From Hydrolagus colliei (Eukaryota): a DNA stretch of 64,000 nt. The notes under the pieces are model-generated. The model had not been told where the DNA came from and ran no database searches. It worked only from the letters and a program-made list of their open reading frames with translations. Position numbers and translations under genes: made by a program. Positions 1 through 61,661 of the stretch are shown piece after piece; the stretch's first letter is position 1; each line of letters opens with the position of its first letter. The stretch spans positions 8,432,001-8,496,000 of the forward strand of contig CM068761.1 in assembly GCA_035084275.1 (NCBI GenBank). The letters run 5' to 3'.

Positions 1-215
1 TGAATGTGTGTGGCGGAGTGGATGTAGAGGGAGGGGTTGAGAGAGGAGAGGAGGGAGGAGAATTCTGAGGAGGTGGAGCAAGTGAGAGTGAAGTGGAGGT
101 TGATGTCGCCGAGGATGATGAGATGAAACGTGACATCCGATCGGAGGAGGATCAGCGGTAAGCTAGGAGTGTGGAGAAGTCAGAGGTGAAGGTTTGGGAG
201 AGTCAGTGCTGGAGG
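1..215 (-). mobile_element. L2-clade LINE fragment (endonuclease region), continues beyond the window start
   Basis: Same sequence as 52354-52565 and homologous to 33400-33540. Confidence 0.75.
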
Positions 216-220
216 TGACT

Positions 221-431
221 AAATATAAAAATAAGATAAAAAGGCCATTAAGAAAACACTGACTGGAGATGGTTGATGTGGTCATTGCAAACACACTCTG
301 GGGATCCGCACAAGAGGCAGGTAATCCCGCCTCTTCATCTGAATGACTCCGCCCCCTCCCACTCACTGATCACATCCACCATCTCCAGTAAGTATTCCCT
401 TAATAGTATTTAGTATCTTATTTATATATTT
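221..431. repeat. MITE-like imperfect palindrome with nested hairpin; paralogs at ~5692-5905, 52574-52784, 58034-58245
   Basis: Arms 221-284 and 367-431 are reverse-complementary; inner stem AAGAGGCAGG-TAAT-CCCGCCTCTT at 312-335. Confidence 0.6.
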
Positions 432-519
432 ACCAAATAACTAATATAAAATTTAGTCAGCTAATATCGCTTCGATTAATCCAATTGCTAATTATTTTTT
501 CTAGCTATTTATTAATTCG

Positions 520-790
520 TCAATGACGAATAATCGAAACAACCTATATTGAGACATATAGCGAGGAGTGCCCCTATATACGTGAGTAAAACAAGGCAGC
601 ACATTACACACAGGTGTAGCCCACAAACCGCTGGATTTAAATGACTACTTTATTGTTTTTTTAAGGGATTGTTAGGTATGTGATGTAAGTAAACTTGCCC
701 AATGTTTCGCGCTTCCTGGAATTGAGTCCAATTCTCTCACTTTTAAGGCATGCGCTCTATCCACTGAGTTACTAGACTCCTCAGTTGAAG
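520..790 (-). mobile_element. Degenerate tRNA-headed SINE; paralogs at ~6000-6255, 33590-33760, 52880-53140, 58350-58600
   Basis: Reverse strand TAACTCAGTGGATAGAGCGC..GGACTCAATTCC (A/B boxes) followed by a degenerate Deu-like core. Confidence 0.55.
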
Positions 791-1042
791 GGTCCTCAGG
801 CATCCATCAGTATATATATTATAATGATGATAATAGGAGGCGGCGCCAATTCATGCAGATAGATGGGTAATCTGTAATAAACCAGACATTAGAATAAAAA
901 ATAGATAGTAAATGTAGCAGAACACGTGTGGCTTTAATATGTGCTGACAACATAAGAAATAAGGAACTAGGGAAGATGAGGAACCATATCGATCTGGAAA
1001 TGGAATGTGGAAGACATGTTGCAGTATAAATCATACATAAAT

Positions 1043-1315
1043 CCTATAGTTGAATGTTTAGAGCACTCGCCATACAAGCAAGTGATCCGGTTTCAATTCC
1101 AGATAGGGCGCAATCTTGAGCAAGTTTCCATACACCATATGGCTCATCCCTCAAAAGAGGGAATCATAAATTGCTCACTTCAATCTGCAACTGTTTGTGG
1201 GACACTGCTGATATGTTCCGCTGATATATATTCACTATTTTTTGATAGATATCGGTCATTGTGTAAAGCGCTTTGAGACGTCTAGAAGATGAAAGGATTG
1301 GTATTATTACTTAGG
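1043..1315 (+). mobile_element. tRNA-headed Deu-domain SINE; paralogs at ~6540-6800, 34022-34290, 53395-53665, 58880-59140
   Basis: A/B-box head, core TTTGTGGGACACTGCTG.., L2-type tail GTAAAGCGCTTTGAGACGTC, matching the DeuSINE (AmnSINE1/SacSINE1) layout. Confidence 0.7.
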
Positions 1316-2379
1316 ATTTGTTTTAGTCGTCCATAAATATTTCCAAAGGAATAGTAACAATTTGTTGCGTTTTGTTTTGGTTTGATGCATCTGCAATCAT
1401 CTGGAAATCTTTGCATTGACAGCAATATTCTTAGACAATCAAAATAATCCATGTTTGTGATATTCGTGAATGTTTGAGTGGAAATGATACCTGTGCCTTT
1501 TGAAGTAAAGACAGAGGATCTCATAATTCAGTATGAATTTAACAGGGTGAAAATTTCGTCAAATTTTAAAATACCACAATAATCGGGTACATTTTGCCAC
1601 ATGTTGGATTTCTACCCAAGCTTCTGATAGATCAGATGTGGGAAGATTCAGGCGACGAACACTCAATCTGTGGAGGGCGCTGCCTCACAATAAATAAAAA
1701 CATTGCTTCACTCTCACCGAGGCAACAATTTTAAATGACTGTCAGTTTGAATTCTATAGCTTAAATGAAATCTATTCAGGTTGTTGCTACTTGTAGTGTC
1801 TGTTTTTGTAGCCAAACACAGTGCTTGTTTTGCAGCAGCAATATCACTCAACAAATGAAAAACAAAAATGGTAAATAATCTTATGCACAGTTATTCCTGG
1901 CTCCAAGACAAACTTTCTTTCACTTTCCATTAATTAATTCCATGGAAACTCTGATATCCACCTGAGCCATCAACAACTTCAATTAGCATCATATTGTAAA
2001 AATCTAATCTCACAAACTGAAGTGAAGTGATTGCAGTGTTTGCCCTAGATATGCCGATAAAAATCATGACAGGTGTTCAATTTTAATTATGATTCTATCA
2101 TTAATTCATTATAGATTATCGTAATTGGTGCCTCCAGAGTGACTATCAATATTACCACATTACTGTCTATCACAGTGCCTGACTTCCAATGTACATCACC
2201 ATGATGGCAGTGAAATCCTCAGTCCTTGCCTTTGAGAATTGATGTTTGTGATGTTGAGACGGTTCAAGGGCAATGTACTTCAGACTATCACATTTAGTTA
2301 ATTTTATGCCATGTGCTCCACCATAGTACAAGGCAATAATAACGAAAGACAAATGCAAGAACACTTTGAAATTATGCAT

Positions 2380-2860
2380 CATGTTGCATATTGGGAGTAT
2401 GCACCAAAACTCGTCATGCTTGCTTTGATTGGATTGAAATTGGGATGGGTGGAAGCATGACCAAGGCACGGTGAAAGAGAAAGGACTTTAGATGAGATTT
2501 CAAGGAGGGAAGGCAGGGCAAGTAAAGTGTTTCCTAGTCAGTGTTCCCAAGGAGTATGGCCAAAACATGTTGAAGGCCTTTCATGAGGAATGCAAGCATG
2601 ATATTTCTCGGCAGCGTGAATGAAGAGGTAATGGCAGTGTTGTTCCATGTAATGGAAGTGTGGGAATGCAGAACTGTGGGTGGCATCCATATTGGGATAA
2701 GGAAAGATCAGCCTCGAGGCTTTGTACAAGCTATGGGCGGTGAAAAATGAATGTGTTAATAGTGTCACTGTCAGTTCGTTGGGTGAGGAATTGCAGGCGG
2801 CCTTCACCTTGTCAACTTTAAACTGGAGAAAATTAGCCATTATTCAGGGCTTGATCACTG
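2380..2860 (-). mobile_element. Old L2-like linker fragment; paralogs at ~7430-7900, 17820-18300, 35380-35830, 54720-55190, 59810-60270
   Basis: ANFLQFKVDKVK resembles the L2 linker LDFLESKIEEI seen at 32700-32780; heavily degraded. Confidence 0.45.
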
Positions 2861-2929
2861 AAGATGGCAGAAAATACATTAAGAAATATGGAGGAACAGC
2901 TTGAACACGTATTTAGTTGTAAACAACAA

Positions 2930-3120
2930 CAACAAAATACAATTTGTATAGCGCCTTTCACATTGGCAGGACGTCCCAAGGAACTGACGAGTCAGGTAGG
3001 GACCAGAGCGGGGAGCAGCGGTCAGGGTAGGAGGAAGGAGAATAAGAGAAGTGACTGTATATTTGTGAGCAAAACACAGCAGCAAAAATTGCGCACAGCA
3101 GTGTCCCACGAATAATTCTG
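2930..3120 (-). mobile_element. Deu-SINE remnant next to the purine tract; paralogs at ~7985-8170, 18380-18507/21524-21590, 35900-35960/37080-37240, 55270-55460, 60360-60550
   Basis: Rev-comp tail (ATAGCGCCTTTCAC..GGACGTCCCAAG) and core (AAATTGCGCACAGCAGTGTCCCAC). Confidence 0.6.
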
Positions 3121-3129
3121 GTATTGGGT

Positions 3130-3655
3130 TTAGGGGAGAAAGGTGGAAAAGAGCATAATTGGGGAGAGGGAGGGAAAGGTGGGGTGAGGTAACGTCGGGG
3201 AGGAAAAGGGTAGGAGAAAGGGGGGTAAGGTGTCGATGGAGGGAAAGGTGGTGGGGGGGTTACAATCAGGGAGAAATGGGGGGAGTAAGGGGGTTAAGGG
3301 GAAATAGGGAGGGAAGGGATAAAAGGTGGAGAGGGAAAGAATGGGGGAAAAGGGAGCAGTTGGATGGAAGAGGGAGAAGAGAGGGAGGAAAGAGAGGGAA
3401 ATAAGGTTGGAAGAGAGGGAGGGGAAAGAAAGTGAAGCGGATAGAGAGGGTAGAGTTGAAAGAGCGAGAGGAAGGAAAGGGGGGGAAGAGTGGGTGAAAA
3501 GAAGGATGAAAGAGAGGCAATGAAAGAGGGAAGTAAAGAGGAGTGGGGTGTAGAACATTGAAATGGCAAAGCAGAGAGGTAAAAGGGGAGGAGAGAAAGG
3601 TGGAAAGGTAGCGAGGGAAGAAAAGGGGTGAAAGGTTAGAGGTCAAAAGGGAGTG
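3130..3655 (+). repeat. Polypurine (G/A-rich) low-complexity tract
   Basis: ~500 bp with very few C on the + strand. Confidence 0.9.
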
Positions 3656-3692
3656 ATTAATTAATGGCAACAAAAATAACAATAACAATAAT

Positions 3693-3845
3693 GAAGTCCT
3701 TGAGCTCGCCACTACTTGTCCTCGCCATCTGCCTGGACGATCTACTTAAGGTGGAACTGGACGTAGGTGAAGTGGGAGGAGACGGCCAACAGTGATGCGT
3801 TGAACAGCTCCTGCTCGGCCTCCAGCCACTGCAGTTTCTAAGGGA
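3693..3845 (-). pseudogene. RUNDC1-like N-terminal fragment, copy 1
   Basis: KLQWLEAEQELFNASLLAVSSHFTYVQFHLK*IVQADGEDK/ELKDF resembles the RUNDC1 motif LEEEQE.LNSSLLAL.SHFAQVQFRLKQIV..ELEDF (recognised from memory). Confidence 0.72.
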
Positions 3846-3886
3846 TTTGGCCTAGTGTGGTGACATGCCCCAAACCAACCGGCTCC

Positions 3887-4209
3887 TCAGCTGGTGTACT
3901 TGGTGATGGCCTTGATGCTCTCGGACACGGCATGGTTGGCCAGCTCACCCAACAGCAGCAGCCTGACCGCCATCTGGATCTCCCGCGATGAGATGGTCTG
4001 CCACTTGCTATACTAGATCAGGTAATAGGCCTCGCAGGCGATCCACTCAAAGATGTCATTGAAGAACGAGTTCACACATTCATGGCCGACGATGGGTGGA
4101 TCTGCTTCAGCACCTTGTACATGTATGAGGTGTAACTGTGTCCTGCGCTTGCGGTAGTGGCGTCTAACCCTGCTGTTTGTCCGCTGCCAGCGCCTTTTTC
4201 AGGGACCAT
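3887..4209 (-). pseudogene. Histone H2B pseudogene, copy 1
   Basis: Reverse strand reads [66 protein letters not shown], with frameshifts and a stop. Confidence 0.9.
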
Positions 4210-4849
4210 CGAAGTGGTCAGCGGCTTGGGATGTCTTTCTGATGTGAAAGTTGCTCTATAAATGTAATTTTGTTGTTGTTGTTCAGTCCCATATTTCTAT
4301 GTTCTGTTGATAAATTTGATCAGTTTAATCAAAATAATGCTAACTATGATAATGATAACTGGATACCTGGGCTAAATCATTTGCTGACTTTAAACAAAAT
4401 CCAATTATGACTACATGTCATAATGCACATGAAGAAGCAAACGCTTTGTATGCTGTCCAGCAATGACACAAGTAAAATTAGCATTGATTTCAATGACCAT
4501 CATGGCCGAGAAACTGTAAGATATTAAAATGCACAAATTGGCTTCCACATTTACCTAAATAATATACGCAATATATCCAGTAAAGCATCACTTGAAATGA
4601 AAAGTCATCATTAAATGAAAGGTACTTTCTCAAAGGTGTTATTATTTATTTCATTTTTAATACACTACAAGTGAGAGTTTTTTTTATTGATGGTCACTTT
4701 GGATTTCTAAGTATGAGCAAATCACTTGACCTTGACCTGTCAAAAACATGCATTGGATCATCGCATGCGAAGACTTCCATAAAAGTGAGTTTTCAAATTT
4801 GAAGAATTGAGTGTATCACCTTCTGAAATGCACTGGTGTGTATGTCCTA

Positions 4850-5690
4850 TCCAGCATCTCCTCACAGTGGGAGTTAGAGGAAAGGACCTGCGAGGCAAGG
4901 CAAGGTGATGGGTGGGGGGACGGGGACGACAATGGGGGTATGGAGGATCTGGTTGGTGGTGGAGAAAGGAAGCCGGGGGTTGTACTTCACCTCCAGGATT
5001 ATCATAGAGAAGAAGGACGATTTGGTGGAGGCTAGAGTGGAGCCTAGAATGGAACGGTAGGGCAAAGTGAGGTACAGCCATATATGCCAGTGGACCGTTA
5101 AGCGGGATTTGAAACAGGTGCTTTCAATGGCCCGCACCTGGCCCTTGAGGAAACGGAAGTTCGTGGTGAACCAGGGTGAGGTTCGGGAGCAGGAGGCATT
5201 CAGTAGGTGAGGGGGACAAGCACGTCATGTGGTGGAGAGGGTATTGTGGAGGAGAGTGAGTGCAGATGATAGGTCAGTGCTGAGGGTGGCCAGAGGGAGA
5301 GGAGTTTGGAGGCAAGCAGAGAACGTTTATGGGGGGATCCTCTGCCATGGCCGGTAGAAGATGGTGATTTCTTGGGGTGGAGGGGAGAGTGATTGGAGAT
5401 GGCCTTGTTGGTGATAGTGAGATCGGAGACACTGAAGCTCAGTGTGATCACCAAGTTAAACGGGTGGCCGTGAACGTGTGTGGCGGAGTGGATGTGGATG
5501 GAAAGGTTGAGAGAGGAGAGGAGGGAGGAGAATTCTGAGGAGGTGGAGCAAGCGGCGATGAAGTGGAGGTTGATGTCGTCGAGGATGATGAGATGAAACG
5601 TGACATCCGATCGGAGGAGGCGCAGAGGTATGCTAGGAGTGTGGAGAAGTCAGAGATGAAGGATTGGGAGAGTCAGTGCTGGAGGTGATA
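4850..5690 (-). mobile_element. L2-clade LINE fragment (EN and linker)
   Basis: Homologous to 32776-33540; begins at a deletion junction at ~4849. Confidence 0.8.
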
Positions 5691-8174
5691 AAATGTAGAA
5701 ATAAGATAAAAAGGTAATTAAGAGAACACTGACAGGAGATGGTTGATGTGGTCATTGCAAACACACTCTTGGGATCCGCACAAGAGGCAGGTAATCCCGC
5801 CTCTTCATCTGAATGACTCCGCCCCCTCCCACTCACTGATCACATCCACCATCTCCAGTAAGTGTTCCCTTAATAGTATTTATTATCTTATTTATATATT
5901 TACTAAACAACTGATATTAAATTTTATCAGCTAATATCACTTCAATTAATCCAATTGCTAATTATTGTTTCTAACTATTTATTAATTCGTCAATGACAAA
6001 TAATTGAAACAACGAATATTGAGACATATAGTGAGAAGTGCCCGTATATACGTGAGGAAAACAAGGCAGTACATTACTCACAGGTGTGCTCCACAAACCG
6101 CTGGATTTAAATGACCAATATATTATTGTTTTTTTGAGGGATTGTTAGGTATGTGGTGTCAGGGAATTTGCTCAATGTTTCACCCTTCCTGGAATTGAGC
6201 CCAATTCTCTCGCTTTTAAGGCACTTGCTGTATCCACTGAGCTACTGGACTGCTCACTTGAAGGGTTTATTATAATGATGATAATAGGAGGCGGCACCAT
6301 TTCATGCAGATAAATGGATAATATGTCTGTTATCAACCACATATTAGAATAAAAAACCAAAAATACATAGTAAATGTAGCAGAACACGTGTGGTGCTCTG
6401 TGTGCTCCAGCACTGACTCTCCCAAACCTTCATATGTGCTGACAACATAAGCAATAAGGAACGAGGGAAGATGAGAAAATATATCGATCTGGAAATGGAA
6501 TGGGGACGACATGTTGCAGTACAAATCAAACATATATCCTATAGTTCAATGTTTAGAGCACTCGTCACACAAGCAAGTGACCTGGATTCAATTCTAGACA
6601 GGGCAAAATCTTGAGCAAGTTTTCATACACAATTATGCCTAATCCATCAAAAGTGGTAATAATAAATTGCTAACTTAAATCTGCGACTGTTTGTGGGCAC
6701 TGCTGACATGTTTCGCCCACATTCATTCACTTTTTGTTTGAGGGACCTTGTGTAAAGCGCTTTGAGACGTCTAGAAGATGAAAGGATTGGTATTATAATT
6801 TAGGATTTGTTTTATTCATCCATAAATAGTTCTAAAGGAATAGAAACACGTTCTTGTGTTTTGTTTTGGCTTGATGCGTCTTGTGTGCAATCATCTGCAA
6901 TCATCTGGAAGTATTTGCATTGACAGCAATATTCTTAGAGAAACAAAATAATCCATGTTTGTGATATACGTGAATGTTTGAATGGAAATGATACCTGTGC
7001 CTATTGAAATAGAGACAGAGCTTCTGATGGTTCAGTATGAATTTAACAGGGTGACAATTTCTTCAAACTTTAAAATACAACATTAATCTGGTACTTTTAG
7101 TCACACCTTGGATTTCTACCCAAGCTTCTGATACGTCAGATGTGGGCAGATTCAGGCGAGGAACACTCATTCTGTGAATGGCGCTATCTCACAATAAATA
7201 AAAACGTTTCCTCACTCTCACTGAGGCAACAATTTTGAATGAGTGTCCGTTTGAATTTCACAGCTTATATGAAATCTACTCAGGTTATTGCTACTTGTAA
7301 TGTCTGCGTTTGTAGCCAAACACAGTGCTTGTTTTGCAGTAGCAATATCACTCAACAAATGAGCAACAAAAATTGTAAATAATCTTATGTATAGACAAAT
7401 GCAAGAACACGTTGCATTTATGCAGCATGTTGCCAAAACTCGTCATCCGTGCTGTGATTGGATTGAAATTGGGATGGGTGGAAGCATGACTAAGGCACGG
7501 TGAAAGAGAAAGGAATTTAGATGCGATTTCAAAGAGGGAAGGCAGTACAAGGCAAAGTGTTTCCCAGACAGTTTTTCCAAGGAATATGGCCAAGACATGA
7601 TGAAGGCCTTTTGCGATGAATGCAAGAATGATTGGCTCTGCAGCGTGAGTGGAGAGACAGTGGCAGTGTTGTTCAGTGTAGTGGAAGTGCGGGAATACAG
7701 AACTGTGGGTGGCATCCATATTGGGATAAAGAAAGATGAGCATCCAAGAGAATACTGACGCTTTGTGGAAGCACTTGCTGGTGAAATACGAATCTGTTAA
7801 TAGTGTCGTTGTCAGTTCTTTGGGTTAGGAACTCCAGACAGGAGCCAAATAAGGCGGCCTTCACTTTGTCAACTTTAAGCTGGAAAAAAGTAGCCATTAT
7901 TAAGGGCTTGATCCGTGAAAATGGCAGGAAACACATTGAGAAATATGGAGGAACAGCTTGAATACAGGTTTATTTGTAAACAACAACAACAACAAAATTA
8001 CATTTCTATAGCGCCTTTCACATTGGGCGGACGTCCCATGGCGCTGAACTGTCAGGTGTGTACCTGAGCAGGGGTCGGTGTAGGGGGAAGGAGAGTAAGA
8101 GAATTGACGGTATATTTGTGGGTGAAACACGGCAACCAAACTGCGCACAGCAGTGTGCCACAAATAGTCGTGGG

Positions 8175-8700
8175 AGTGGGGTTAGGGGAGAAAGGGGGAA
8201 AAGAGCATAAGGAGGATAGGGAGGGAAAGGTGAGGTGAGGTACATTTGGCAGGAAATGTGTAGGAGAAAGCGGGTAAGGTGGAGAGGAAGGTAAAGGTGA
8301 GGGTTTCAAATCTGGGAGAAATGGGGTTAAAGGGAAACAGGGAAGGAAGGGAGAAAATGGGTAGAGGGAAAGAATGGGGGAAAAGGGAGCAGAAGGAAGA
8401 ATGAGGGAGAAGAGTGGGGAGGGAAAAGAGGGAAGAAAGGAGGGAAGATAGGGAGGGGAAAGAAAGGGAAGTGGACAGAGAGGGTAGGGGTGAAAGAGCG
8501 AGCGGAAAGAAAGGCGGCGGGGGGGGGGGGGGGGGGGGGAAAGATGGAGTGAAGAGAGAAGAGGAAAGAGAAGCAATGAAAGAGGGAAGTAAAGAGCGGA
8601 TTAGAGATAGGCAAATAAGGGAGGTAAAAAGGGAGGAGAGAAAGGGGGAAAGGGAGCAAGGGAAGAAAATTGGGGAAAGGTTAAGGTGGAAAAGGGGGGT
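8175..8700 (+). repeat. Polypurine tract including a G21 run (8519-8539)
   Basis: Composition. Confidence 0.9.
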
Positions 8701-8740
8701 ATTAATCAATGCCAACAAAAATAACAACAATAACAATAAT

Positions 8741-8890
8741 GAAGACCTTGAGCTCACAACTCCTTGTCCTCATCATCTGCCTGGACGATCTGTTTGAGGT
8801 GGAACTGGAATTGGGTGCAATGGGAGGTGAGGGCAAACAGTGATGAGTTGAACACTCCTGCTCGGACTCCAGCTGCTGCAGTTCCTCGGC
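8741..8890 (-). pseudogene. RUNDC1-like N-terminal fragment, copy 2
   Basis: MAEELQQLESEQE/FNSSLFALTSHCTQFQFHLKQIVQADDEDKE/ELKVF. Confidence 0.75.
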
Positions 8891-8960
8891 CATGATGGTC
8901 AGGGCCAGGAATTGGGCCTAGTGTGGTGACAATAGTGTGGCCCCAAAACTGACTGGCTCT

Positions 8961-9285
8961 TCAGCTGGTGTACTTGGTGATGGCCTTGGTGCTCTCAGAC
9001 ATGGCATGTTTGGCCAGCTCACCCGGCAGCAGCAGCCTGATCGCCATCTGGATCTCCCACGATGCCACTTGCTATACTGGATCAGGTAATAGGTCTCGAA
9101 GGCGATCCACTCAACGATGTCGTTGGCGAACTAGTTCACCACATTCATGGCCGACGATGAGATGCCCGTGTTCTTGTGGACCTGCTTCAGCACCTTGTAC
9201 ATGTATGAGGTGTAACTCTGTGTCCTGCGCGTGTGGTGTCTAACTCAGCTGCCCGTCCGCCAGCGTCGCATTTTTCAGGTACCAC
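8961..9285 (-). pseudogene. Histone H2B pseudogene, copy 2
   Basis: [25 protein letters not shown] with frameshift. Confidence 0.9.
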
Positions 9286-11460
9286 CAAACTGGTCAGCGG
9301 CTTATGATGTCTTTCCAATGTGAAAGGTGCTCCATAAATGTAATTTTGTTGTTGTTGTTCAGTCCCATATTTCTATGTTCTGTTAATAAGTTTGATCAGT
9401 TTAATTAAAATAATCGTAACTATGATAATGATAACTGGATACCTGGGATAAATCATCTGCTCCAATGACTTTAAACAAAATTCAATTATGACTACATGTC
9501 ACAATGCACACGAAGAAGAAAACACTTTGTATCCTATCCAGCGATGACACAATTAAAATGAGCATTGACTTCAATAACCATTATGGCTGAGAAACTGTAA
9601 GATATTAATATGCACAAATTGGCATCCACATTTACCTAAATAATATACGCCAGTGAAGCATCACTTGAAACGAAAACTCATCATTAAATGAAAGGTACTT
9701 TCTCAACGGTATTATTATTTATTTCTTTTTTAATACACTACAAGTGTGAGTTTTTTTATTGAAGGCCATTTTGGATTTCTATGTATGAGCAAATCATTTG
9801 ATCTTGACCTGTCAAAAATGTGCATTGAATGATCGCATGCTTCCATACAAGCGAGTTTTCAAATTTGTATGTCCTACACTGGTGGAGGTGCCATCCTTTG
9901 CATTACACTTGAAACCAAATACCATTTTCTTGTTAATTTGGAAGTTAAGGATCCCATGTCACAATGGAAATGGGGAACAAAGCGTTTGGTGTCCTGGCCA
10001 ACAATTGCCCCAAGTAAAACTATCATTCATTTCAAGGCTGTTTGTGAAACATCACCATACACTGATTTGCTGCTTCATTTTTCCAAACAGCATGCACAGG
10101 ATATTCCGCGAAGCATCGTGACAGGTCCTCTTGCTAAGAAACGTGCTTTGTCAAAAGTGTTATCTATTTATTTCATTTAAAAGTACATGTATTATGGAAG
10201 TGTTCAGTTTAAAAATGAATGCAGTGTTGGGTTTTCTATGCATGTGGAAGTTACTTTGACGTGTCCTAAATGTGCATGGGATCAGCGCATGGTCAGAAAT
10301 GAATACACGTGAGAGGGAACTCTGGGGGAATCTTCACTTGAGGACTGTTCTTTTAGCGGGTTGTGTAACATTAATCTGCTTTTACGCTTCCCGTTCCAGT
10401 CTATAGCACAATTTCTATGTCAATGACATGTCCAGAAGATGGGACGTATGTCTTTGTATATTGATGCCATTATATCTCTGTTCCCTGGAAGGAAAAGTAG
10501 ATTAACAGCCGTTCATGTTTTATCAGAAAAAGCAATGGCTGCAAATTAATTCACTGTGGCACTGATCTGGCTGTGATTCGCACAGGATGACTCCAGTCTC
10601 TGTTAAAGGGAACGTAACCGAAAAAATGTGTGGACAACCTGTGTGTGGATTTTATTTGGTATTTTGTTTTGAATTGATGTCATAACAAATATATTGATAA
10701 CTAAATACATGTTTGCAAACATCTTAAACCCTTCTCTTTTGGTACCACGACTGTCTCCAGGTAAATCCCTTCGATCGAATAAGAAATAACTATCAAAAAG
10801 TCAAAACAAACCCAAATATGTCTATATGTGTGTGTGAGGGACGGGTAATAGCAAATGACAGTCGCCCCTCACGATTAATGTGTTGTTGTTCCCCAGGCTG
10901 GTTGATGAAGAGAGCCGGCACTGTATTCATTGTATATAACTTTGCATGAAAGAAACGTTCTTTTATCATCGGGAAATGTGAATCGCGCTATCATTCTGCT
11001 GTTAAATATATTACATCTGCAGTGAGGCATGGTGCAGTAAAGGGAATCCTAGCGTGAGGGCAGGGCTGGTAGCTGCCAGAAGGTGAATTGGAAAAAAGTA
11101 TTTCAGAAATAGATAAACCGTATTTGTGAGGATCCCTGTCGCCGGCTGTGAAGTGTGACGTGCACGGCAGGGTCTGTATCAGTTCAGGTGAGGCTTGTCA
11201 GTGTGTAAACTGTAACTGAATGAAAATATGAAACTTTCCCAACTACAAATTATCTTTCATCGGAACAAGCTTCACAAGTGAATAAATCTCCTTGTACCTG
11301 GGCAAGCGAATCTTGCAGGATTCACACACTGCAAAGCGGTGAACTACATGAATATTTAATAGAATAAGACCACGACACTGTCAATAATTGAAGTTTGTGC
11401 TATTTAAAAAAAGCTCTGTTTCACACTGCAATTGAAAACTAGCATCATTTTCTGATGTCT

Positions 11461-11735
11461 TGTAGGTCAGTTTAGAAGACTTGCCTTACAATCGAGTGAC
11501 CTGGGTTTGATTCGTCAGGGCGAAACCTTGGGTAGATTACCTTACCCCACACGCTCGATAATAATCCCTAAAACCCCCCATTAATAAATTGATCATTTCA
11601 CGACTATTTGTTGGAAACAACTTTGCGTAATTGGCTGCCCCTTTCGCTCACATATACACAGTATATTCTGTGATGCGCTATCGGACGTCTAGAAGACGTG
11701 GAAAGCACCATTTTTAAATGAAGGATTATTATTAC
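11461..11735 (+). mobile_element. Deu-domain SINE upstream of gene 1 promoter
   Basis: tRNA-like head, core TTTGCGTAATTGGCTGCC, tail GGACGTC..GAAAGCAC. Confidence 0.7.
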
Positions 11736-12174: not shown

Positions 12175-12531
12175 GAACAACCGCAGCTGTTACCCTGACT
12201 CAGCCACCGTCCATCTCAACCTCCCCGGGAAACACCGTCAAGATCACCTGTACCATGTCCGGAGGCAGCATCGGCAGCTACTACACGAGCTGGTACCAGC
12301 AGAAGCCTGGCAGCGCCCCTGTGTTTGTTTGGTATGAGTACAGTAGTAGCTCCATCAGAGGTCAGGGGATTCCTGATCGATTCACTGGTTCTGTGGACTC
12401 ATCGAGCAACGCCATGCATTTAACCATCAGCGGTGTGCAGCCGGAGGACGCCGCCGATTACTACTGTGGTGTCTGGTATAGCAGCAGCTATCCCTTCATC
12501 TTTGGTACAAGGACCAAGCTGAGTTTGAAAA
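12175..12531 (+). CDS. IGL: Ig lambda light chain gene 1, germline-joined VJ exon
   Basis: TTTCTCCAG acceptor; reads TTAAVTLTQPPSISTSPGNTVKITC..WYQQKPGSAPVFVW..DYYCGVWYSSSYPFIFGTRTKLSLK in one frame, then GTAAGT donor; no RSS between V and J. Spliced gene gives 242 aa. Confidence 0.96.
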
Positions 12532-14149
12532 GTAAGTAATCTTGTTTCGACTTTAGATGATAATTGTGATCACGTCAGGAGGACGTCCAAATATAATTGT
12601 ATGTTTGTCTGTATTCGATATTGTTTCACACGCTTTCTGTGATAGTCACATCTGGTTTCCTAATGGTAAACCTTTTATGTGGAAATCGGAATTTTTAAAG
12701 AATCAAACACACGATGCCTGATGTTAACTGAAATTCTGTGAAGAATTTGGACGGATATTACAGCCAACTAACAATGGTAAAAAGGTGGAGAAGGACTGAC
12801 ATAAGCGAAGATGAGATAATCGTGGTGATATTTATACTTAACATTCTGAAGGCTTGAAGATGTCAGATTCACTGAAGCACCGCTCAGAGATCCTGATAAA
12901 GAATGAGCTACACCAGGGAAATTAGTTCACACTTCACGCCTGAGATTGAAGTTAAATCTCTTTGTGCCAGATTATTTAATTTCTATGTTTACTTGTTAAC
13001 CTCTTTCCCCAGTTTGTCAGCACGAAGTGATGTTTAAAAGAATCTCCATCATAAGGAGATCAACAGTATATTTCCATCTGGTGACTGTCGCTGGGGTCTA
13101 ATGGACCGAATGGTGAGCGGTTGAATCTCAGAGGGAACCAGATACCCTGAAAATAGTGTTCGTCCGTGACTAACTGATCATTTTGAAAATTTAAACTTCT
13201 TTGAGACTGAGTAACATTATGTGTAACCAATATATGGATGATATAGAATAACTGTTGCCCAGTTTGTTCTCAGCATTAGTACGCATTCAAATCTAATCAA
13301 TTCGTTTTAGAATAACTCAAATGTTATAATCTGCTCCGTGTTATTGCCATAAACAGTCTTTGCATGTTAACATTTTTCTATTCCAGAGTTCTATTCGGAG
13401 TTGTTCAAATATTTTAATTTCTCCCCATTACCACGATTAAAATACATTTCTATTTTACCATTTATTGAACGCATTTATCTTCAGATTTCTAATTTTACAA
13501 ACGTATTATTTTCTCCCAATTCCGTGGTTGATGTCGCTAAGGGCAGCACCATTGGAGAGACTCAATAATATCATGGTTTTCACCACAAGTTGCTGCAGTT
13601 GGTCAGATGGGAATCATTCCTCATTAAAGACAGAGGCTGAGCGCCGGCTCAATCTGGTCAAAATACATTTTCTTCCTTGAAAATTAACTTTATTGTTGCC
13701 CTCAGGCATCATATGAAAGGGATTCCCATTTGCGTATTGTGATTTGTGTATTGTTAATTGTGACTTGTGTATTGTGCGCTGTTAATTATGAATTAAAATC
13801 AGCAAATACGGTGCCAAATAAATTATTGTGAAATCGGAAGCCCCTTTCTGTAACCAATCAAACATTGGATTCTGATTGTGCTCTTAAATAGCTTTTCAGT
13901 GCAGAGTGTTTGGACAAAAAGACAACGTTCATTTTCGTCCTATTTTCAGGATCTTACTCTTTTTACAAACTCTATCGAATTAATAATGATGTTTCACTTC
14001 GTTTTCACTCAGCGCCTCCCGCCACATAATCCTTGTGACGCGACGTTTAGTGTCTAGTGTTATTTCATTTGATTGTATTTACTAATTAGGTGAATTGAGG
14101 AAAATTTTAACGTTTGCCCACCACTGCAAAAAACCCTATAATAAATTGG

Positions 14150-17815: not shown

Positions 17816-18507
17816 CGGGAGTATGCACCAAAACTCATCATCCGTGCTGTGATTGGTTTGAAATTGTGATGGGTGGAAGCACGACCAATGTACGATGAAC
17901 GAGAAAGGACTTGAGATGAGATTTCAATGAGTGAAGGCAGTACAAGGCAAAGTGTTTCCAAGACAATTTCCCCAAGGAGTATGGCCAAAACATGATGAAG
18001 GCCTTTCGTGATGAATGCAAGAATGATTGTCTCTGCTGCAGAAGTGGATAGGCCGAGGCAGTGTTGTTCAATATAGTGGAAGTGCAGGAATACAGAACTG
18101 TGGGTGACATCCAAATTGGGAAAAGGAAAGATCAGCATCCAGGAGAATAGTGATGCTTTGTAGAAGCTCTGGGCGGTGATAAATGAAATTGTGAATAGTG
18201 CTGTTGTCAGTTCTTTGGGTGAGGAATTGCAAACAGGAGCCAAATGAGATGGCCTTCACCTTGTCAACTTTAAACTGTAGAAAATTAGCCATTATTCAGG
18301 GCTTGCTGCCTGAAAATGGAAGGAAACCCATTGAGAAATATGGAGGAACAGCTTGAACACATGTTTGTTTGTAAACAACAAGAACAAAATACAATTTCTA
18401 TAGCACCTTTCAAATTAGGAGGACGTCCCAACGCACTGACCAGTCAGTTAGGGACCAGAGCGGGGGTCAGGGGTCAGTATAGGAGGAAGTAGAGTAAGAG
18501 AAGTGAC

Positions 18508-21500
18508 GGGCGGGGGGCTTTAAACTAATCCCGGGTGGTGAGGGTGGGAAACTGATCAGTAGTTCAGATACGGGAGGGGTAACAAAGAGGACAGGGGTAA
18601 GGGTAAGATGGGAGAAAAGAGCAGAGGAAGTAATTTGTGCCTTAGAGTGCATGTATGTGAATGCACGAAGTTTGAGAAATACAATTGGTGAGCTGCAGGC
18701 TGAGGTTGCTGCGAGGCGATATGATGTTATAGCAGTAACAGAGACTTGGCTCCAGCATGGGCAGGAATGGGATTTGAACATTCCTGGTTATAATGTATTC
18801 AAGAGGGATAGAGAAGGGAGAAAAGGGGGCGGGGTGGCAATTTTAGTTAAGGACTCAGTGACTGCCTTAGAAAGGAACGAGGTGGAAGAAGGACTAAAAA
18901 CCGAATCTATCTGGTTAGAAATGAGGAATAAAAAAGGTGCAGTTACACTGTTAGGGGTATACTATAGACCACCAAATAGTGGGGAGGAGATAGACAAGCA
19001 GATCTGCAAGCGTATCACGGAGAAATGCAGAGCTATAGAGAGTGATAATGGGTGACTTCAACTATCCCAACATAGACTGGCAGAATAGTAGAGTAAAGGG
19101 CAAGGAGGGAGAAGAATTCCTGAAGTGTGTGCAGGACAACTTTCTTGATCAGTATGTTTCCAGTCCAACGAGGAAAGAAGCATTGCTGGATCTAGTTTTG
19201 GGAAATGAGGTAGGGCAAGTTCAACAGGTTTCTGTAGGTGAGCATCTAGGGAATAGTGACCACAATATCGTTAGATTCAGAATAATTATGGAAAGGGATA
19301 AGGAACGATCACAAGTGAGGACACTCAACTGGAAAAGGGCTAATTTCAATGAGTTCAGGTGGGACCTAGCCAAGGTGGATTGGAAAGAAAAATTGGCAGG
19401 TAAGACAACTAACGAGCAGTGGGCAGCGTTCAAAGAGGAGATAGTTCAGGCACAGGTCAAAAGAATCCCCACAAAGGTGAAATGTAAGGTATCCAAACCT
19501 CCCTGGATGACTTAGGAAATCGGGGCCAACATAAAACAAAAAAAAGAGGCTTCTGATAAGTGTCAGGCTCAAACTTCAGAAGGGAACCAAGCAGAATATA
19601 GGAAGTGTAGGATAGAACTAAAAAAGGAAGTTAGAGGGGCAAAGAGACTGCATGAAAAACAATTAGCGAGTAAGATTAAGGGGAACCCTAAGGTGTTTTT
19701 ACCAACATATTAAGAGTAAAATGTTGGTCAAGGATAGGGTGGGGCCAATTAGGGACCTAGGAGGAAATCTCATTGTGGAGGCAGAGGGCATGGCTGATGT
19801 ACTGAATGAGTACTTCGCCTCTGTCTTCACAAAAGAAAAGGATACAGCCAATACCATGGTATTAGAGGAGAGGGTAGGAGAAATGGATAGAATAATTATA
19901 ACCAGAGAGGAAGTTCTAAAAGGTTGACGTTGCTCAAGGTGGATAAGTCACCTGGTCCGGATGGGATGCACCCTAGGTTACTAAGTGAGGCACGGGAGCA
20001 TATAGCAGGGACTCTGGCCACGATCTTTCAATCTTCCTTGGACACAGGGGTCGTGCCAGAGGACTGGAGGATAGCTAATGTTACTCCCTTGTATAACAAG
20101 GGGCAGAAGGACAAGCCTGGTAACTACAGACCAGTCAGACTAACGTCGGTAGTGGGCAAACTTCTAGAGTCCATAATCAGGGACAAGGTAGATCTTCACT
20201 TAGAAAGATGTAGGCTAATAAAGGACAGTCAACATGGATTTGTTAAAGGCAAATCTTGCCTTACAAATCTGATAGAATGTTTTGATGAGGTAACGGAATG
20301 GGTGGATAATGGTAGCGCAGTTGACGTAGTTTACATGGACTTTCAAAAGGCTTTTGACAAAGTGCCACATGAGAGACTTATTATGAAATTAAAGGCCCAT
20401 GGCATAAAAGGAACAGTGGCAGCGTGGATCCACAACTGGCTGCGAGACACAAAGCAGAGAGTTGTAGTGAGCGGCTGTTTTTCAGATTGGAGGGAAATGA
20501 GCAGTGGTGTGCCACAGGGATCAGTTTGGGGACCATTGCTGTTTGTAATCTACATCAATGATCTGGACTTGGGTGTACGGAGTACAGTTTCCAAGTTTGC
20601 AGATGACACTAAGTTAGGGAGAATAGTAAATAGTGAGGAGGATAGTAGCCATCTGCAAGAGGATATAGACAAATTGGTAAAGTGGGCAAACACATGGCAG
20701 ATGAAGTTTAATGCAGAGAAGTGTGAGGTGATGCATATTGGGAGAAGAAATGAAGGGAGGCAATATAGGCTAGATAGTACAATTTTAAATGGTGTGAAGG
20801 AACAGAGAGACCTGGGGATTTGTGTTAGTGACTCGTTGAAGGTGGCAGGACAGGTAGACAAGGCTGTTAAGAAGGCATATGGGATACTAGGCTTTATAAA
20901 TAGGGGTATAGAGTACAAAAGTCAGGAAGTGCTGACTAACCTCTATAGGACTTTGGTGAGGCCTCAGCTGGAATACTGTGTTCAATTCTGGTCACCACAC
21001 TACAGAAAGGATGTGAAGGCATTGGAAAGGGTGCAGCGAAGATTTACTAGGATGGTGCCAGGATTGAGGGACTTCAGCTATGAGGAGAGGCTAGATAGGC
21101 TAGGGTTATTCTCTCTGGAGCAGAGAAGATTGAGGGGATACCTAATAGAGGTTTATAAGATCATGAGGGGTTTCGACAGGGCAAATAGAGAAAAACTATT
21201 TCCACTCGTGGGTGAATCTGTGACTCGTGGTCACAGATTTAAAATAGTTTCCAGGTGAAGTAGAGGGGAGCTGAGGAGAAATTTTTTCACTCAGCGAGTT
21301 GTTCGAATCTGGAATGCATTGCCTGAAAAGGTGGTGGAGGCTGATTCGATAACAACTTTTAAAAGGGAATTAGATCTTTATTTAGGGAGAACAGGTCTAT
21401 TAGGCTATGGGGAGCGGGAAGGGCAGTGGGATTGAATCGCTCTTTTCAAAGAGCCGGCACAGACTAGATGGGCCGAATGGCCTCCTTTTGTGCCGTAAAA

Positions 21501-21523
21501 TTCTATGAATCTATGAATCTATG
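18508..21523 (+). mobile_element. CR1-clade LINE, 5'-truncated: last ORF1 codons plus disrupted ORF2 (APE endonuclease and RT)
   Basis: Starts GRGALN* (ORF1 end); EN motifs YVNARS, VTETW, GDFN; RT motifs MDFQKAFDKV, GVPQGS, FADDTK; frameshifts near 19040, 19700 and 19920, stops at 19513 and 21256, likely natural stop 21435; ends in (A/T)TCTATGA tail repeats. Confidence 0.95.
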
Positions 21524-22115: not shown

Positions 22116-22150
22116 TTAACGACAACAAAAAACAGAACAATAACAATAAT

Positions 22151-22300
22151 GAAGTCCTTGAGCTCGCCATTGCTTGTCCTCACCATCTACCTGGACGATC
22201 TACTTAAGATGGAACTGGACGTAGGTGAAGTGGGAGGAGAGGGCCAACAGTGATGAGTTGAACACCACCTGCTCGGCCTCCAGCCGCTGCAGTTTCTCAT
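22151..22300 (-). pseudogene. RUNDC1-like N-terminal fragment, copy 3
   Basis: EKLQRLEAEQVVFNSSLLALSSHFTYVQFHLK*IVQVDGEDK/ELKDF. Confidence 0.75.
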
Positions 22301-22344
22301 GGATTTGGCCTAGTATGGTGACATGCCCCAAACCAACCAGCACC

Positions 22345-22669
22345 TCAGCCGGTGTACTTGGTGATGGTCATGATGCTCTCGGACACGGCGTGTTTGTCCA
22401 GCTCACCCAGCAGCAGAAGCATGACCGCCATCTAGATCTCCCGCGATAAGATGGTCTGCCACGTGCTATACTGGATCAGGTAATATGCCTCGCAGGCGAT
22501 CCACTCGAAGATGTCTTTGACGAACGAGTTTACACATTCATGGCTGATGCTGGGATGTCCGTGTTTTGGTGGACCTGCTTCAGCACCTTGTATATGTAAC
22601 TCTGTGGCTTGCGGTAGTGGCGTCTAACCCTGCTGTTTGTCCACTGCCAGCGCCTTTTTCAGGGACCAC
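22345..22669 (-). pseudogene. Histone H2B pseudogene, copy 3
   Basis: Same H2B histone-fold motifs with indels. Confidence 0.9.
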
Positions 22670-26209: not shown

Positions 26210-26557
26210 GAACAACCGCAGCTGTTACCCTGACTCAGCCACCGTCCATCTCAACCTCCCCGGGAAACACCGTCAAGATCACCTGTACCATGTCCGGAGG
26301 CAGCATCGGCAGCTACTACACGAGCTGGTACCAGCAGAAGCCTGGCAGCGCCCCTGTGTTTGTTTGGTATCAGAGCTCCACCAGAGGTCAGGGGATTCCT
26401 GATCGATTCACTGGTTCTGTGGACTCATCGAGCAGCTCCATGCATTTAACCATCAGCGGTGTGCAGCCGGAGGACGCCGCCGATTACTACTGTGGTGCCA
26501 TATATAGCAGCAACTATCCCTTCATCTTTGGTAAAGGGACCAAGCTGAGTTTGAAAA
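26210..26557 (+). CDS. IGL: Ig lambda light chain gene 2, germline-joined VJ exon
   Basis: Open frame ..WYQSSTRGQG..DYYCGAIYSSNYPFIFGKGTKLSLK with canonical FGxGT; AG/GT splice sites. Spliced gene gives 239 aa. Confidence 0.96.
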
Positions 26558-37070: not shown

Positions 37071-37249
37071 AGAAGATACAAAATGTAGGCGGTCCGAAGG
37101 TGCTCTGCAGTCAGGTAGGGACCAGAGCAGAGGGGGCAGGGATCAGCGTAAGGGTAAGGAGAGTAAGAGAATTGACTGTATATTTGTGGGCGAAACATAG
37201 CAGCCAAATTACGCACAGCATTGTTCCACAAACAGTTGTGTGAGTGGGG

Positions 37250-37703: not shown

Positions 37704-37860
37704 GAAGTCCTTGAGCTCGCCACTACTTGTCCTCACCATCTGCCTGGATGATCTGCTTAAGGTGGAACTGGACCTGGGTGAAGTGGGAGGAAAGGGCCAA
37801 CAGTGATTAATTACTTGAACAGCTCCTGCTCGGCCTCCAGCCACTGCAGTTTCTCAGGGA
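37704..37860 (-). pseudogene. RUNDC1-like N-terminal fragment, copy 4
   Basis: EKLQWLEAEQELF/SLLALSSHFTQVQFHLKQIIQADGEDK*/ELKDF. Confidence 0.75.
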
Positions 37861-37901: not shown

Positions 37902-38227
37902 TCAGCTGGTGTACTTGATGATGGCATTGATGCTCTCGAACATGGCATGTTTGGCCAGCTCACTCAGCAGCAGCAGCCTGACCGCCATCTGGATCTCCCA
38001 CGATGAGATGGTTTGCCACTTGCTGCACGATATCAGGTAACAGGCCTCACAGTCAATCCACTCAACGATGTCATTGACGAACGAGTTCACCACAGTCATG
38101 GCCGACGATGAGAAGCCCATGTTCTTGTGGACCTGCTTCAGCACCTATGAGGTGTAACTCTGTGTCCTGCGCGTGCGGCATCTAACCCAGCTGATCGTCC
38201 GCCACCGTCGCTATTTTCAGGGACCAC
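37902..38227 (-). pseudogene. Histone H2B pseudogene, copy 4
   Basis: ORF 37902-38144: [59 protein letters not shown]; N-terminus disrupted. Confidence 0.9.
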
Positions 38228-56035: not shown

Positions 56036-56185
56036 GAAGTCCGTGAGCTCGCCACTACTTGTCCTCGCCATCTGCCTGGACGATCTACTTAAGGTGGAAC
56101 TGGACGTAGGTGAAGTGGGAGGAGACGGCCAACAGTGATGCGTTGAACAGCTCCTGCTCGGCCTCCAGCCACTGCAGTTTCTAAG
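56036..56185 (-). pseudogene. RUNDC1-like fragment, copy 5
   Basis: Duplicate of 3693-3845. Confidence 0.7.
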
Positions 56186-56229: not shown

Positions 56230-56552
56230 TCAGCTGGTGTGCTTGGTGATGGCCTTGATGCTCTCGGACACTGCATGGTTGGCCAGCTCACCCAACAGCA
56301 GCAGCCTGACCGCCATCTGGATCTCCCGCGATGAGATGGTCTGCCACTTGCTATACTAGATCAGGTAATAGGCCTTGCAGGCGATCCACTCAAAGATGTC
56401 ATTGAAGAACGAGTTCACACATTCATGGCCGACGATGGGTGGACCTGCTTCAGCACCTTGTACATGTATGAGGTGTAACTGTGTCCTGCGCTTGCGGTAG
56501 TGGCGTCTAACCCTGCTGTTTGTCCGCTGCCAGCGCCTTTTTCAGGGACCAT
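56230..56552 (-). pseudogene. Histone H2B pseudogene, copy 5 (duplicate of copy 1)
   Basis: Near-identical to 3887-4209 at offset 52343. Confidence 0.9.
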
Positions 56553-61116: not shown

Positions 61117-61265
61117 GAAGACCTTGAGCTCACAACTCCTTGTCCTCATCATCTGACTGGACGATCTGTTTGAGGTGGAACTGGAATTGGGTGCAGTGGG
61201 AGGTGAGGGCCAACAGTGATGAGTTGAACACTCCTGCTCGGACTCCAGCCGCTGCAGTTCCTCGG
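61117..61265 (-). pseudogene. RUNDC1-like fragment, copy 6
   Basis: Duplicate of 8741-8890. Confidence 0.72.
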
Positions 61266-61336
61266 CCATGATGGTCAGGGCCAGGAATTGGGCCTAGTGT
61301 GGTGACAATAGTGTGGCCCCAAAACTGACTGGCTCT

Positions 61337-61661
61337 TCAGCTGGTGTACTTGGTGATGGCCTTGGTGCTCTCAGACACGGCAGGTTTGGCCAGCTCACCC
61401 AGCAGCAGCAGCCTGATCGCCATCTGGATCTCCCACGATGCCACTTGCTATACTGGATCAGGTAATAGGTCTCGAAGGCGATCCACTCAACGATGTCGTT
61501 GGCGAACTAGTTCACCACATTCATGGCCGACGATGAGATGCCCGTGTTCTTGTGGACCTGCTTCAGCACCTTGTACATGTATGAGGTGTAACTCTGTGTC
61601 CTGCGCGTGCGGTGTCTAACTCAGCTGCCCGTCCGCCAGCGTCGCATTTTTCAGGTACCAC
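61337..61661 (-). pseudogene. Histone H2B pseudogene, copy 6 (duplicate of copy 2)
   Basis: Near-identical to 8961-9285 at offset 52376. Confidence 0.9.

What the first reader, a model, noticed from the sequence alone, without database searches (positions are those of the whole stretch)
3693..4209. Chimeric histone H2B / RUNDC1-like relic carried in the IgL cluster monomer
Seen: on the minus strand an H2B pseudogene runs to TKYTS* and, about 15 codons later in another frame, the sequence reads (consensus of copies) EKLQRLEAEQELFNSSLLALSSHFTQVQFHLKQIVQADGEDK..ELKDF. The cassette recurs six times (3.7, 8.7, 22.2, 37.7, 56.0, 61.1 kb), each time next to a purine tract, and lies 2.7-3.4 kb upstream of the leader in all three intact monomers. 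Knowledge: the second peptide resembles the conserved N-terminal coiled region of RUNDC1 (recognised from memory). Inference: two unrelated gene fragments were fused once, captured in the ancestral lambda monomer and amplified with it. That makes the cassette a lineage marker for dating cluster expansion and possibly a clue to the locus of origin.
Basis: partly seen in the sequence, partly recalled or inferred. Interest (0 to 1): 0.72.

Follow-up and report, generated by a model that had tools for sequence, protein, structure and literature searches.

The report
Dead H2B–RUNDC1 chimeric pseudogene, co-amplified
A broken copy of a histone H2B gene joined to a 50-codon scrap of the RUNDC1 gene sits upstream of antibody light-chain gene clusters in a chimaera-type fish and has been copied passively with them; it is real, but it is ordinary junk of a known kind.

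Summary
Six minus-strand copies exist (3.7, 8.7, 22.2, 37.7, 56.0, 61.1 kb). Each is an H2B pseudogene ending TKYTS*, followed 45-72 nt later by a second coding relic and then a ~530-nt purine tract.

The second relic is RUNDC1. A profile of its pieces finds 247 proteins (best E 2.4e-15). Every full-length hit that was scanned has a C-terminal RUN domain, and the named ones are called RUNDC1.

The relic covers about 50 codons from the interior of RUNDC1 exon 1. No copy has an open frame.

All copies share the same junctions. Their distances follow those of the host monomers' introns and promoters, so there was one fusion, then passive co-amplification.

New here: an inverted L2-type retroposon tail lies 5 nt from the H2B start. 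An L2-type (ATT/GTT)n repeat directly follows RUNDC1. A truncated SINE lies beyond the purine tract. Stitching by L2 reverse transcriptase is the best guess, but I found no target-site duplication and no histone stem-loop.

The scan already noted this cassette elsewhere in the same locus, and other H2B chimeras elsewhere in this genome.

The parts
3887..4209 (-). Copy 1, H2B pseudogene (start codon to TGA). It carries a 15-nt deletion, a frameshift and an in-frame stop.
3693..3840 (-). Copy 1, RUNDC1 relic (*KLQWLEAEQELFNASLLAVSSHFTYVQFHLK*IVQADGEDK..ELKDF). It has lost the 19-nt block that holds the Met codon.
3660..3692 (-). (ATT/GTT)n repeat directly after the last RUNDC1 codon. It is the same repeat type that ends L2-type tails.
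3130..3660 (.). Purine tract on the + strand (pyrimidine on the cassette strand); degenerate low-complexity sequence
2922..3112 (-). 5'-truncated SINE body with an L2-type 3' tail ending in (GTT)4
4212..4290 (+). Inverted L2-type tail of about 78 nt. Its inner end lies 5 nt from the H2B start codon.
8961..9285 (-). Copy 2, H2B pseudogene
8741..8893 (-). Copy 2, RUNDC1 relic that keeps the Met codon (MAEELQQLESEQE, then a 1-nt deletion, then FNSSLFALTSHCTQFQFHLKQIVQADDEDKEL*)
22345..22669 (-). Copy 3, H2B pseudogene
22151..22298 (-). Copy 3, RUNDC1 relic
37902..38227 (-). Copy 4, H2B pseudogene (longest open stretch, 80 aa)
37704..37855 (-). Copy 4, RUNDC1 relic (4-nt insertion and a stop)
56230..56552 (-). 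Copy 5, H2B pseudogene (99% identical to copy 1)
56036..56183 (-). Copy 5, RUNDC1 relic
61337..61661 (-). Copy 6, H2B pseudogene (about 98.5% identical to copy 2)
61117..61269 (-). Copy 6, RUNDC1 relic that keeps the Met codon

Best explanation
The cassette is a dead chimeric pseudogene. It joins a nearly full-length but promoterless copy of a histone H2B coding sequence, with 45-72 nt of trailing sequence, head-to-tail to about 50 codons from the interior of RUNDC1 exon 1. Both pieces have the same orientation.

The fusion arose once. It was most likely stitched when an L2-type LINE reverse transcriptase switched templates between cellular RNAs during an insertion primed on an L2/SINE terminal (GTT)n repeat. 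It landed about 3 kb upstream of, and antisense to, an ancestral germline-joined VJ-C light-chain cluster.

Since then it has done nothing. It decays neutrally, faster than its flanks because it was CpG-rich, and is carried along each time the monomer or part of it is duplicated.

Shown: the identity of both pieces, their pseudogene state, the single origin, and the co-amplification. Inferred: the RNA-mediated, L2-driven origin.
For: H2B: PDB E 4e-21 and Pfam Histone 1.3e-9.

RUNDC1: the profile search gives 247 hits, best E 2.4e-15. All 10 full-length hits scanned have a C-terminal RUN domain. The hits that carry NCBI names are called RUNDC1. tblastn of frog RUNDC1 residues 93-140 against copy 3 gives E 2.7e-11.

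Pseudogene state: every copy has stops and frameshifts in both parts. R>W, R>H and P>L changes and a CpG count of 21 against 40.6 expected fit methylation decay.

Single origin: the junctions are identical in all six copies.

Co-amplification: cassette K2P distances are c2-c4 0.144, below c2-c3 0.196 and c3-c4 0.191. The J-C introns give the same ranking: m1-m3 0.086, below m1-m2 0.131 and m2-m3 0.143.

No constraint: the cassette is no better conserved than its flanks.

Retro context: an inverted L2-type tail lies 5 nt from the H2B start. The window holds 14 runs of (A/G)TT x4 or more; 8 end L2-type tails and the other 6 are the runs directly after RUNDC1. A truncated SINE with an L2-type tail lies downstream. 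Both gene pieces and that SINE share one orientation.

Earlier notes of the scan report other H2B-containing retro-chimeras in this genome (not checked by me).
Against: There is no significant target-site duplication around the two-tail bracket (p 0.4-0.8).

No histone 3' stem-loop was found after the H2B stop, by Rfam or by a degenerate pattern.

The RUNDC1 piece is internal at both ends. It lacks the upstream ERWAPxGA motif and stops 2 codons before the conserved AF(R/K)GCP. Two mid-template switches are therefore needed.

Neither parent stretch contains an intron, so intron loss cannot show an RNA origin.

L2-type tails are common in this window, so the flanking tails could be unrelated later insertions.

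The origin of the 530-nt purine tract is unexplained.
Confidence: 0.6

Rival explanations
1. DNA-level patchwork. Fragments of H2B and RUNDC1 DNA, or stray cDNA, were ligated into a double-strand break by end joining. The L2/SINE pieces nearby are unrelated insertions.
For: No target-site duplication and no histone stem-loop. The RUNDC1 piece is internal at both ends. L2-type tails are frequent in the window.
Against: Both gene pieces and the downstream SINE share one orientation. The only (A/G)TT runs in 64 kb that do not end an L2-type tail sit exactly at the RUNDC1 end. The inverted tail lies within 5 nt of the H2B start. Only coding or transcribed sequence is present.
Confidence: 0.2
2. 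It is one inserted copy of a mobile composite retroposon family: SINE/L2-tailed, exon-carrying and SVA-like, with an H2B module. The family is also dispersed elsewhere in the genome.
For: Earlier notes of the scan describe 1.3-1.4-kb L2/SINE-tailed composites with PEBP4-UQCC2-H2B at several unrelated sites, and an IgM-H2B chimera, in this genome. The bracket here is of similar size, 2922-4290, about 1.37 kb.
Against: All notes on the H2B-RUNDC1 junction lie in this one IgL locus. The six copies here differ exactly as their host monomers do. No target-site duplication was found. The earlier follow-up on a sister copy also found no sign of a mobile family. In those other chimeras only the end of H2B is present, whereas here the whole coding sequence is.
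Confidence: 0.12
3. The cassette is kept because it does something for the Ig clusters, for example as an antisense transcript, a boundary element or a regulatory element.
For: It is present upstream of all three intact monomers at a similar distance. It is GC-rich against AT-rich flanks.
Against: It is less conserved among paralogues than the adjacent non-coding flank and the J-C intron. It also occurs in partial monomers without an Ig gene (copies 1 and 5). Its CpGs are decayed. The constant distance follows from co-duplication.
Confidence: 0.04
4. It is the remains of real neighbouring H2B and RUNDC1 genes at the place where the Ig cluster arose.
For: None beyond the adjacency itself.
Against: Only 45-72 nt separate the H2B stop from RUNDC1 codon ~55-95. 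The first ~55-95 codons of RUNDC1, its promoter and all later exons are missing. The H2B promoter region is replaced by an L2-type tail.
Confidence: 0.03

Closest known systems
LINE-mediated chimeric (bipartite or tripartite) retro-pseudogenes formed by template switching (Gogvadze, Buzdin et al., BMC Genomics 2007, PMC2104539; U6-L1 and mRNA-L1 chimeras of mammals)
   Same: Copies of unrelated cellular transcripts are fused head-to-tail in one orientation, next to LINE/SINE 3' sequence. They are non-functional, and a double switch is implied.
   Different: The presumed enzyme is an L2-type LINE with a stem-loop tail ending in (GTT)n, not a poly(A) LINE. No target-site duplication survives. 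The RUNDC1 piece is internal, not end-to-end. An inverted tail sits at the 5' side. The RNA origin is inferred, not shown.
Twin-priming or 'two-tailed' LINE insertions
   Same: Two L2-type tails in inverted orientation bracket the 1.37-kb block 2922-4290.
   Different: In this window the flanks give no significant target-site duplication. An internal (ATT/GTT)n repeat and a 530-nt purine tract separate RUNDC1 from the far tail, which fits several events as well as one.
Passenger pseudogenes and repeats inside tandemly duplicated multigene arrays (cartilaginous-fish Ig clusters; germline-joined light chains, e.g. PMC2192082, PMC2193156)
   Same: A neutral insert is fixed in one monomer and multiplied by unequal crossing-over or segmental duplication. 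It is usable as a marker of duplication order.
   Different: Nothing essential. This cassette is simply an unusually recognisable passenger.
SVA-like composite retroposons that trap host exons
   Same: SINE/L2-tailed composites about 1.3-1.4 kb long that carry host gene fragments including H2B.
   Different: The RUNDC1 piece does not end at a splice donor. In frog, exon 1 runs about 17 codons further. There is no evidence of dispersal.

Membership tests
Histone H2B gene | Sequence match over the H2B histone fold and C-terminal helix | tested here: met
   PDB H2B E 4e-21 over 80/80 residues and Pfam PF00125 at 1.3e-9; tblastn with a stingray H2B against all six copies
Histone H2B gene | Intact open reading frame | tested here: not met
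   Stops, frameshifts and deletions in all six copies; the longest open stretch is 80 aa
Histone H2B gene | 3' stem-loop of replication-dependent histone mRNA | tested here: not met
   No Rfam Histone3 match at E<=10 in copy 2; no match to a degenerate stem-loop pattern in any spacer. It could have decayed beyond recognition.
Histone H2B gene | Own promoter (TATA, octamer) upstream | tested here: not met
   An inverted L2-type tail begins 5 nt upstream of the start codon
RUNDC1 (Pfam PF26030 RUNDC1 region plus PF02759 RUN domain) | Conserved N-terminal coiled region (..LEEEQ.LNSSLLALTSHFAQVQFRLKQIV..) | tested here: met
   Profile search: 247 hits, best E 2.4e-15. Scanned full-length hits carry a RUN domain, and named hits are called RUNDC1. 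tblastn E 2.7e-11.
RUNDC1 (Pfam PF26030 RUNDC1 region plus PF02759 RUN domain) | C-terminal RUN domain and the rest of the protein | tested here: not met
   tblastn of full-length RUNDC1 proteins against the window finds only residues ~55-105 (frog 93-140). This is a fragment, not a gene.
LINE template-switch chimeric retrocopy | Two or more transcript copies fused directly in the same orientation | tested here: met
   H2B and RUNDC1 are both on the minus strand, 45-72 nt apart, with the same junction in six copies
LINE template-switch chimeric retrocopy | 3' end carries the LINE's own 3' terminal sequence | tested here: inconclusive
   Only an (ATT/GTT)n repeat of the L2-tail type follows RUNDC1. 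Such runs occur nowhere else in the window except at L2-type tails. A full SINE/L2 tail lies 0.6 kb further on.
LINE template-switch chimeric retrocopy | Flanking target-site duplication | tested here: not met
   The best flank matches are 8/12 and 9/14, with p 0.4-0.8 against shuffles, in four copies. The age of the insert (copies 9-20% apart) may have erased it.
LINE template-switch chimeric retrocopy | Loss of introns relative to the parental genes | not testable with these tools
   H2B genes are intronless (general knowledge). The RUNDC1 piece lies inside exon 1 in the frog gene.
L2-type (stringent, stem-loop-tailed) LINE/SINE 3' tail | Conserved 3' stem followed by a short tandem repeat, shared with RT-encoding LINE copies | tested here: met
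   The tails align with the 3' ends of LINE fragments in the window. A conserved 7-bp stem AGCGCCTT/AAGGCGCT is kept with G-U changes only, with no compensatory pairs. The clade name 'L2' itself comes from my memory and earlier notes and was not tested by phylogeny.
Passenger of the IgL duplication unit | The divergence pattern of the copies equals that of the host monomers | tested here: met
   The ranking of pairwise distances is the same for cassette, J-C intron and promoter

The most novel reading that the evidence does not exclude
H2B mRNA may be a preferred co-template of the L2-type reverse transcriptase in this holocephalan lineage. One possible reason is that its 3' stem-loop resembles the stem-loop that these enzymes recognise in their own tails. 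On this reading, H2B-RUNDC1, PEBP4-UQCC2-H2B and IgM-H2B are products of one recurrent, mechanistically specific process, not unrelated accidents.
Probability: 0.12. Interest if true: 0.55.

Novelty: new member of a known kind. Interest (0 to 1): 0.25.

Why it matters
The cassette has little biological weight of its own. It has two uses.

First, it is a neutral, easily recognised tag for working out the order of duplications in a cartilaginous-fish light-chain array, where selection and gene conversion blur the exons. C exons here are 2-5% apart, while the cassettes are 9-20% apart.

Second, it is one more case, in a genome dominated by L2/CR1-type LINEs, of host mRNA pieces being stitched together. 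Taken with the other H2B chimeras noted in this genome, this could become a small study of template choice by stem-loop-dependent LINE enzymes.

Tried and rejected
1. I first read the ATG kept in copies 2 and 6 (ACCATCATGGCC) as the RUNDC1 start codon, with the junction at the mRNA 5' end. I rejected this. In vertebrate RUNDC1 that Met is internal (frog residue 95, fish ~55-60) and is preceded by a conserved ERWAPxGA region that is absent here.

2. Apparent similarity of the spacer to upstream RUNDC1 residues (the gar and scallop alignments) lies in the wrong reading frame and is chance.

3. Histone stem-loop: no match by Rfam or by a degenerate pattern.

4. Target-site duplication around 2922-4290, and around narrower boundaries: nothing above chance (and inspection).

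5. A chondrichthyan RUNDC1 for DNA-level breakpoints: two full-length searches listed only ray-finned fishes in the top 120.

6. The H2B piece in the word-indexed protein search gave one hit only.

7. Exact look-up of cassette ORFs in the 15-billion-protein collection found none. GTG-start ORFs were sent translated with V as the first residue, which alone could miss a called gene.

There is no copy-number or RNA test.

9. The findings look-up by relatives was blank, which means nothing.

10. The PDB ranking of the C domain does not separate lambda from kappa.

11. The whole-window Rfam scan at gathering scores found nothing.

Full report
**What is there**

Read on the minus strand, window 4209-3887 is a histone H2B coding sequence that ends ...AITKYTS-TGA. 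After 45 nt (72 nt in copies 2 and 6) a second coding relic follows in another frame, ending ...ELKDF at 3693.

blastn of the region against the window finds six collinear copies, aligned in A1:
- Copy 1: 3660-4260
- Copy 2: 8700-9330
- Copy 3: 22130-22730
- Copy 4: 37680-38290
- Copy 5: 56005-56605
- Copy 6: 61080-61710

Copies 1/5 and 2/6 are nearly identical because window 1-11585 repeats at 52354-64000 with 98.2% identity. The older lineages (copies 1 and 3; copy 2; copy 4) differ by 9-20%.

**Identity of the two pieces**

The 80-residue open stretch of copy 4 matches H2B chains of solved nucleosomes over its full length (E 4e-21) and Pfam Histone (1.3e-9). Its differences from real H2B are largely R>W, R>H and P>L, the signature of CpG decay. 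The consensus has 21 CpG against 40.6 expected.

For the second piece I aligned the open fragments of all six copies (A2) and searched the profile against 1.84 billion representative proteins. This gave 247 hits at E<=0.001, the best at 2.4e-15.
- All ten full-length hits that I scanned carry a C-terminal RUN domain.
- Those with NCBI names are 'RUN domain-containing protein 1', from sponge to frog.
- The match always falls in the conserved N-terminal region (..LEEEQ.LNSSLLALTSHFAQVQFRLKQIV..).
- tblastn of frog RUNDC1 residues 93-140 against copy 3 gives E 2.7e-11.

**How much of each gene is present**

H2B is present from its start codon (ATG in copies 1 and 5, GTG in the others) to its stop, with small deletions. 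No promoter remains. No histone 3' stem-loop is detectable.

The RUNDC1 piece is about 50 codons long. Copies 2 and 6 keep a 19-nt block with an in-frame ATG (MAEELQ..). This Met is the internal Met of vertebrate RUNDC1 (frog residue 95, fish ~55-60), not the start. The conserved upstream ERWAPxGA motif is missing, and its place is taken by H2B.

The piece ends two codons before the conserved AF(R/K)GCP. In the frog gene, exon 1 encodes residues 1 to ~169 without interruption. The relic is therefore interior to exon 1, and intron loss cannot be used to tell an RNA origin from a DNA origin.

Full-length RUNDC1 queries find nothing else in the window. No copy of either part has an open frame.

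The cassette lies between retroposon sequences.
- An inverted repeat (2922-2988 and 4217-4283) turns out to be two 3' tails of the LINE/SINE family that is common in this window. They align with the 3' ends of LINE fragments at 36, 17, 31, 45 and 50 kb. They share a conserved stem AGCGCCTT/AAGGCGCT followed by (GTT)n.
- The near tail (+ strand, 4212-4290) ends 5 nt from the H2B start.
- The far tail (minus strand) belongs to a 5'-truncated SINE body, 3112-2922.
- Directly after the last RUNDC1 codon comes (ATT/GTT)n. In the whole window there are only 14 runs of four or more (A/G)TT units. Eight of them end L2-type tails, and the other six are these RUNDC1-adjacent runs.
- Between that repeat and the SINE lies the purine tract, which is 83-85% purine in all six copies.

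**Origin**

Two promoterless gene pieces in one orientation, the same as the downstream SINE, are followed by an L2-type terminal repeat and capped by an inverted L2-type tail. This is what template switching by a LINE reverse transcriptase produces. Bipartite and tripartite chimeras of this kind are documented (PMC2104539).

An earlier follow-up in this scan read a sister copy 200 kb away as a single 'two-tailed', target-site-duplication-flanked L2 insertion. I can confirm the tails but not the duplication. The best flank matches in four copies are at chance level (p 0.4-0.8).

The internal (ATT/GTT)n and the purine tract fit several successive events as well as one. The RNA-mediated origin is therefore the best-supported inference, not a demonstrated fact. 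A DNA-level end-joining patchwork stays open at about 0.2.

**Relation to the Ig clusters**

The window holds three germline-joined VJ exons (V-set) with C exons (C1-set) on the + strand, plus one extra C exon. The leader ATGs are at 12016, 26035 and 41003, each preceded by an ATTTGCAT octamer about 130 nt upstream.

The cassette is antisense to these genes. Its H2B start lies 2.73, 3.37 and 2.78 kb upstream of the leaders.

| Region compared | Closest pair | Other two pairs |
|---|---|---|
| Cassette (K2P) | c2-c4 0.144 | c2-c3 0.196, c3-c4 0.191 |
| J-C intron (K2P) | m1-m3 0.086 | m1-m2 0.131, m2-m3 0.143 |
| Promoter region (K2P) | m1-m3 0.06 | m1-m2 0.153, m2-m3 0.164 |

Copies 2, 3 and 4 sit in monomers m1, m2 and m3. 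The ranking is the same in all three regions, so the cassette has the history of its monomer.

The cassette is not better conserved than the neighbouring non-coding DNA. It diverges somewhat faster, as expected for formerly CpG-rich neutral sequence. Copies 1 and 5 sit in 5-kb partial units without an Ig gene. Nothing suggests a function.

**What remains untested**

All scan notes on this junction lie within about 265 kb of the same piece.

Other notes report different H2B-containing chimeras (PEBP4-UQCC2-H2B, IgM-H2B) elsewhere in this genome. I could not compare their sequences with this one. If H2B capture is recurrent, that would be the only part of this story with wider interest.

I did not obtain a cartilaginous-fish RUNDC1 sequence, so the DNA-level breakpoints are not fixed. 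The label 'lambda' and the species ('a chimaera') come from earlier notes, not from my own tests.

**Verdict**

It is wrong or unsupported in treating the cassette as a clue to a locus of origin. The cassette is a new example of a known kind of junk, a chimeric and probably LINE-made pseudogene riding in a tandem array. Interest is low.

Noticed in passing
window 1-11585 and 52354-64000: A recent large duplication: the two stretches are 98.2% identical over 11.6 kb, 52.35 kb apart. The array unit seen here is therefore itself duplicated.
   Followed up: partly
window 18507-21522: A LINE of about 3 kb with endonuclease (Exo_endo_phos) and reverse transcriptase (RVT_1, 444-aa ORF) reading frames on the + strand. 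It is inserted between the SINE tail and the purine tract of copy 3, so it is younger than the duplication of that monomer.
   Followed up: partly
window 35957-37100: An L2-type LINE 3' fragment (271-aa ORF on the minus strand, with its own tail at 35957-36015) inserted into the truncated SINE beside copy 4.
   Followed up: partly
window 11884, 25903, 40871: An ATTTGCAT octamer about 130 nt upstream of each leader ATG (12016, 26035, 41003), as in a classical Ig promoter.
   Followed up: no
window 47753-48058: A fourth C exon with no VJ of its own, 2-4% from the other C exons. The scan has noted it already (s1-139055).
   Followed up: no
window 12255-12539, 26290-26565, 41258-41542: V and J are fused in the germline (..YYCGVWYSSSYPFIFGTRTKLSL..). 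The VJ exons differ by 4.5-8% and the C exons by 2-5%, against 9-14% for the J-C intron.
   Followed up: partly
window 6030-6260 (minus): A tRNA-derived SINE head (TAGCTCAGTGG and GGGCTCAATTCCAG boxes) with the same body motif as the truncated SINE next to the cassette.
   Followed up: no
protein P0289 (Hypanus sabinus 'histone H2B-like'): This annotated stingray protein carries the same unusual SSWEIQ and RLLLLGE changes as the relic. Either the same CpG sites decayed in parallel, or it is itself an annotated pseudogene.
   Followed up: no
window 3130-3660 and its five paralogues: The origin of the 530-nt, 83-85% purine tract is unexplained. It has only weak internal periodicity (units of 69 nt and about 12 nt) and diverges faster than its surroundings (K2P up to 0.2).
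   Followed up: partly
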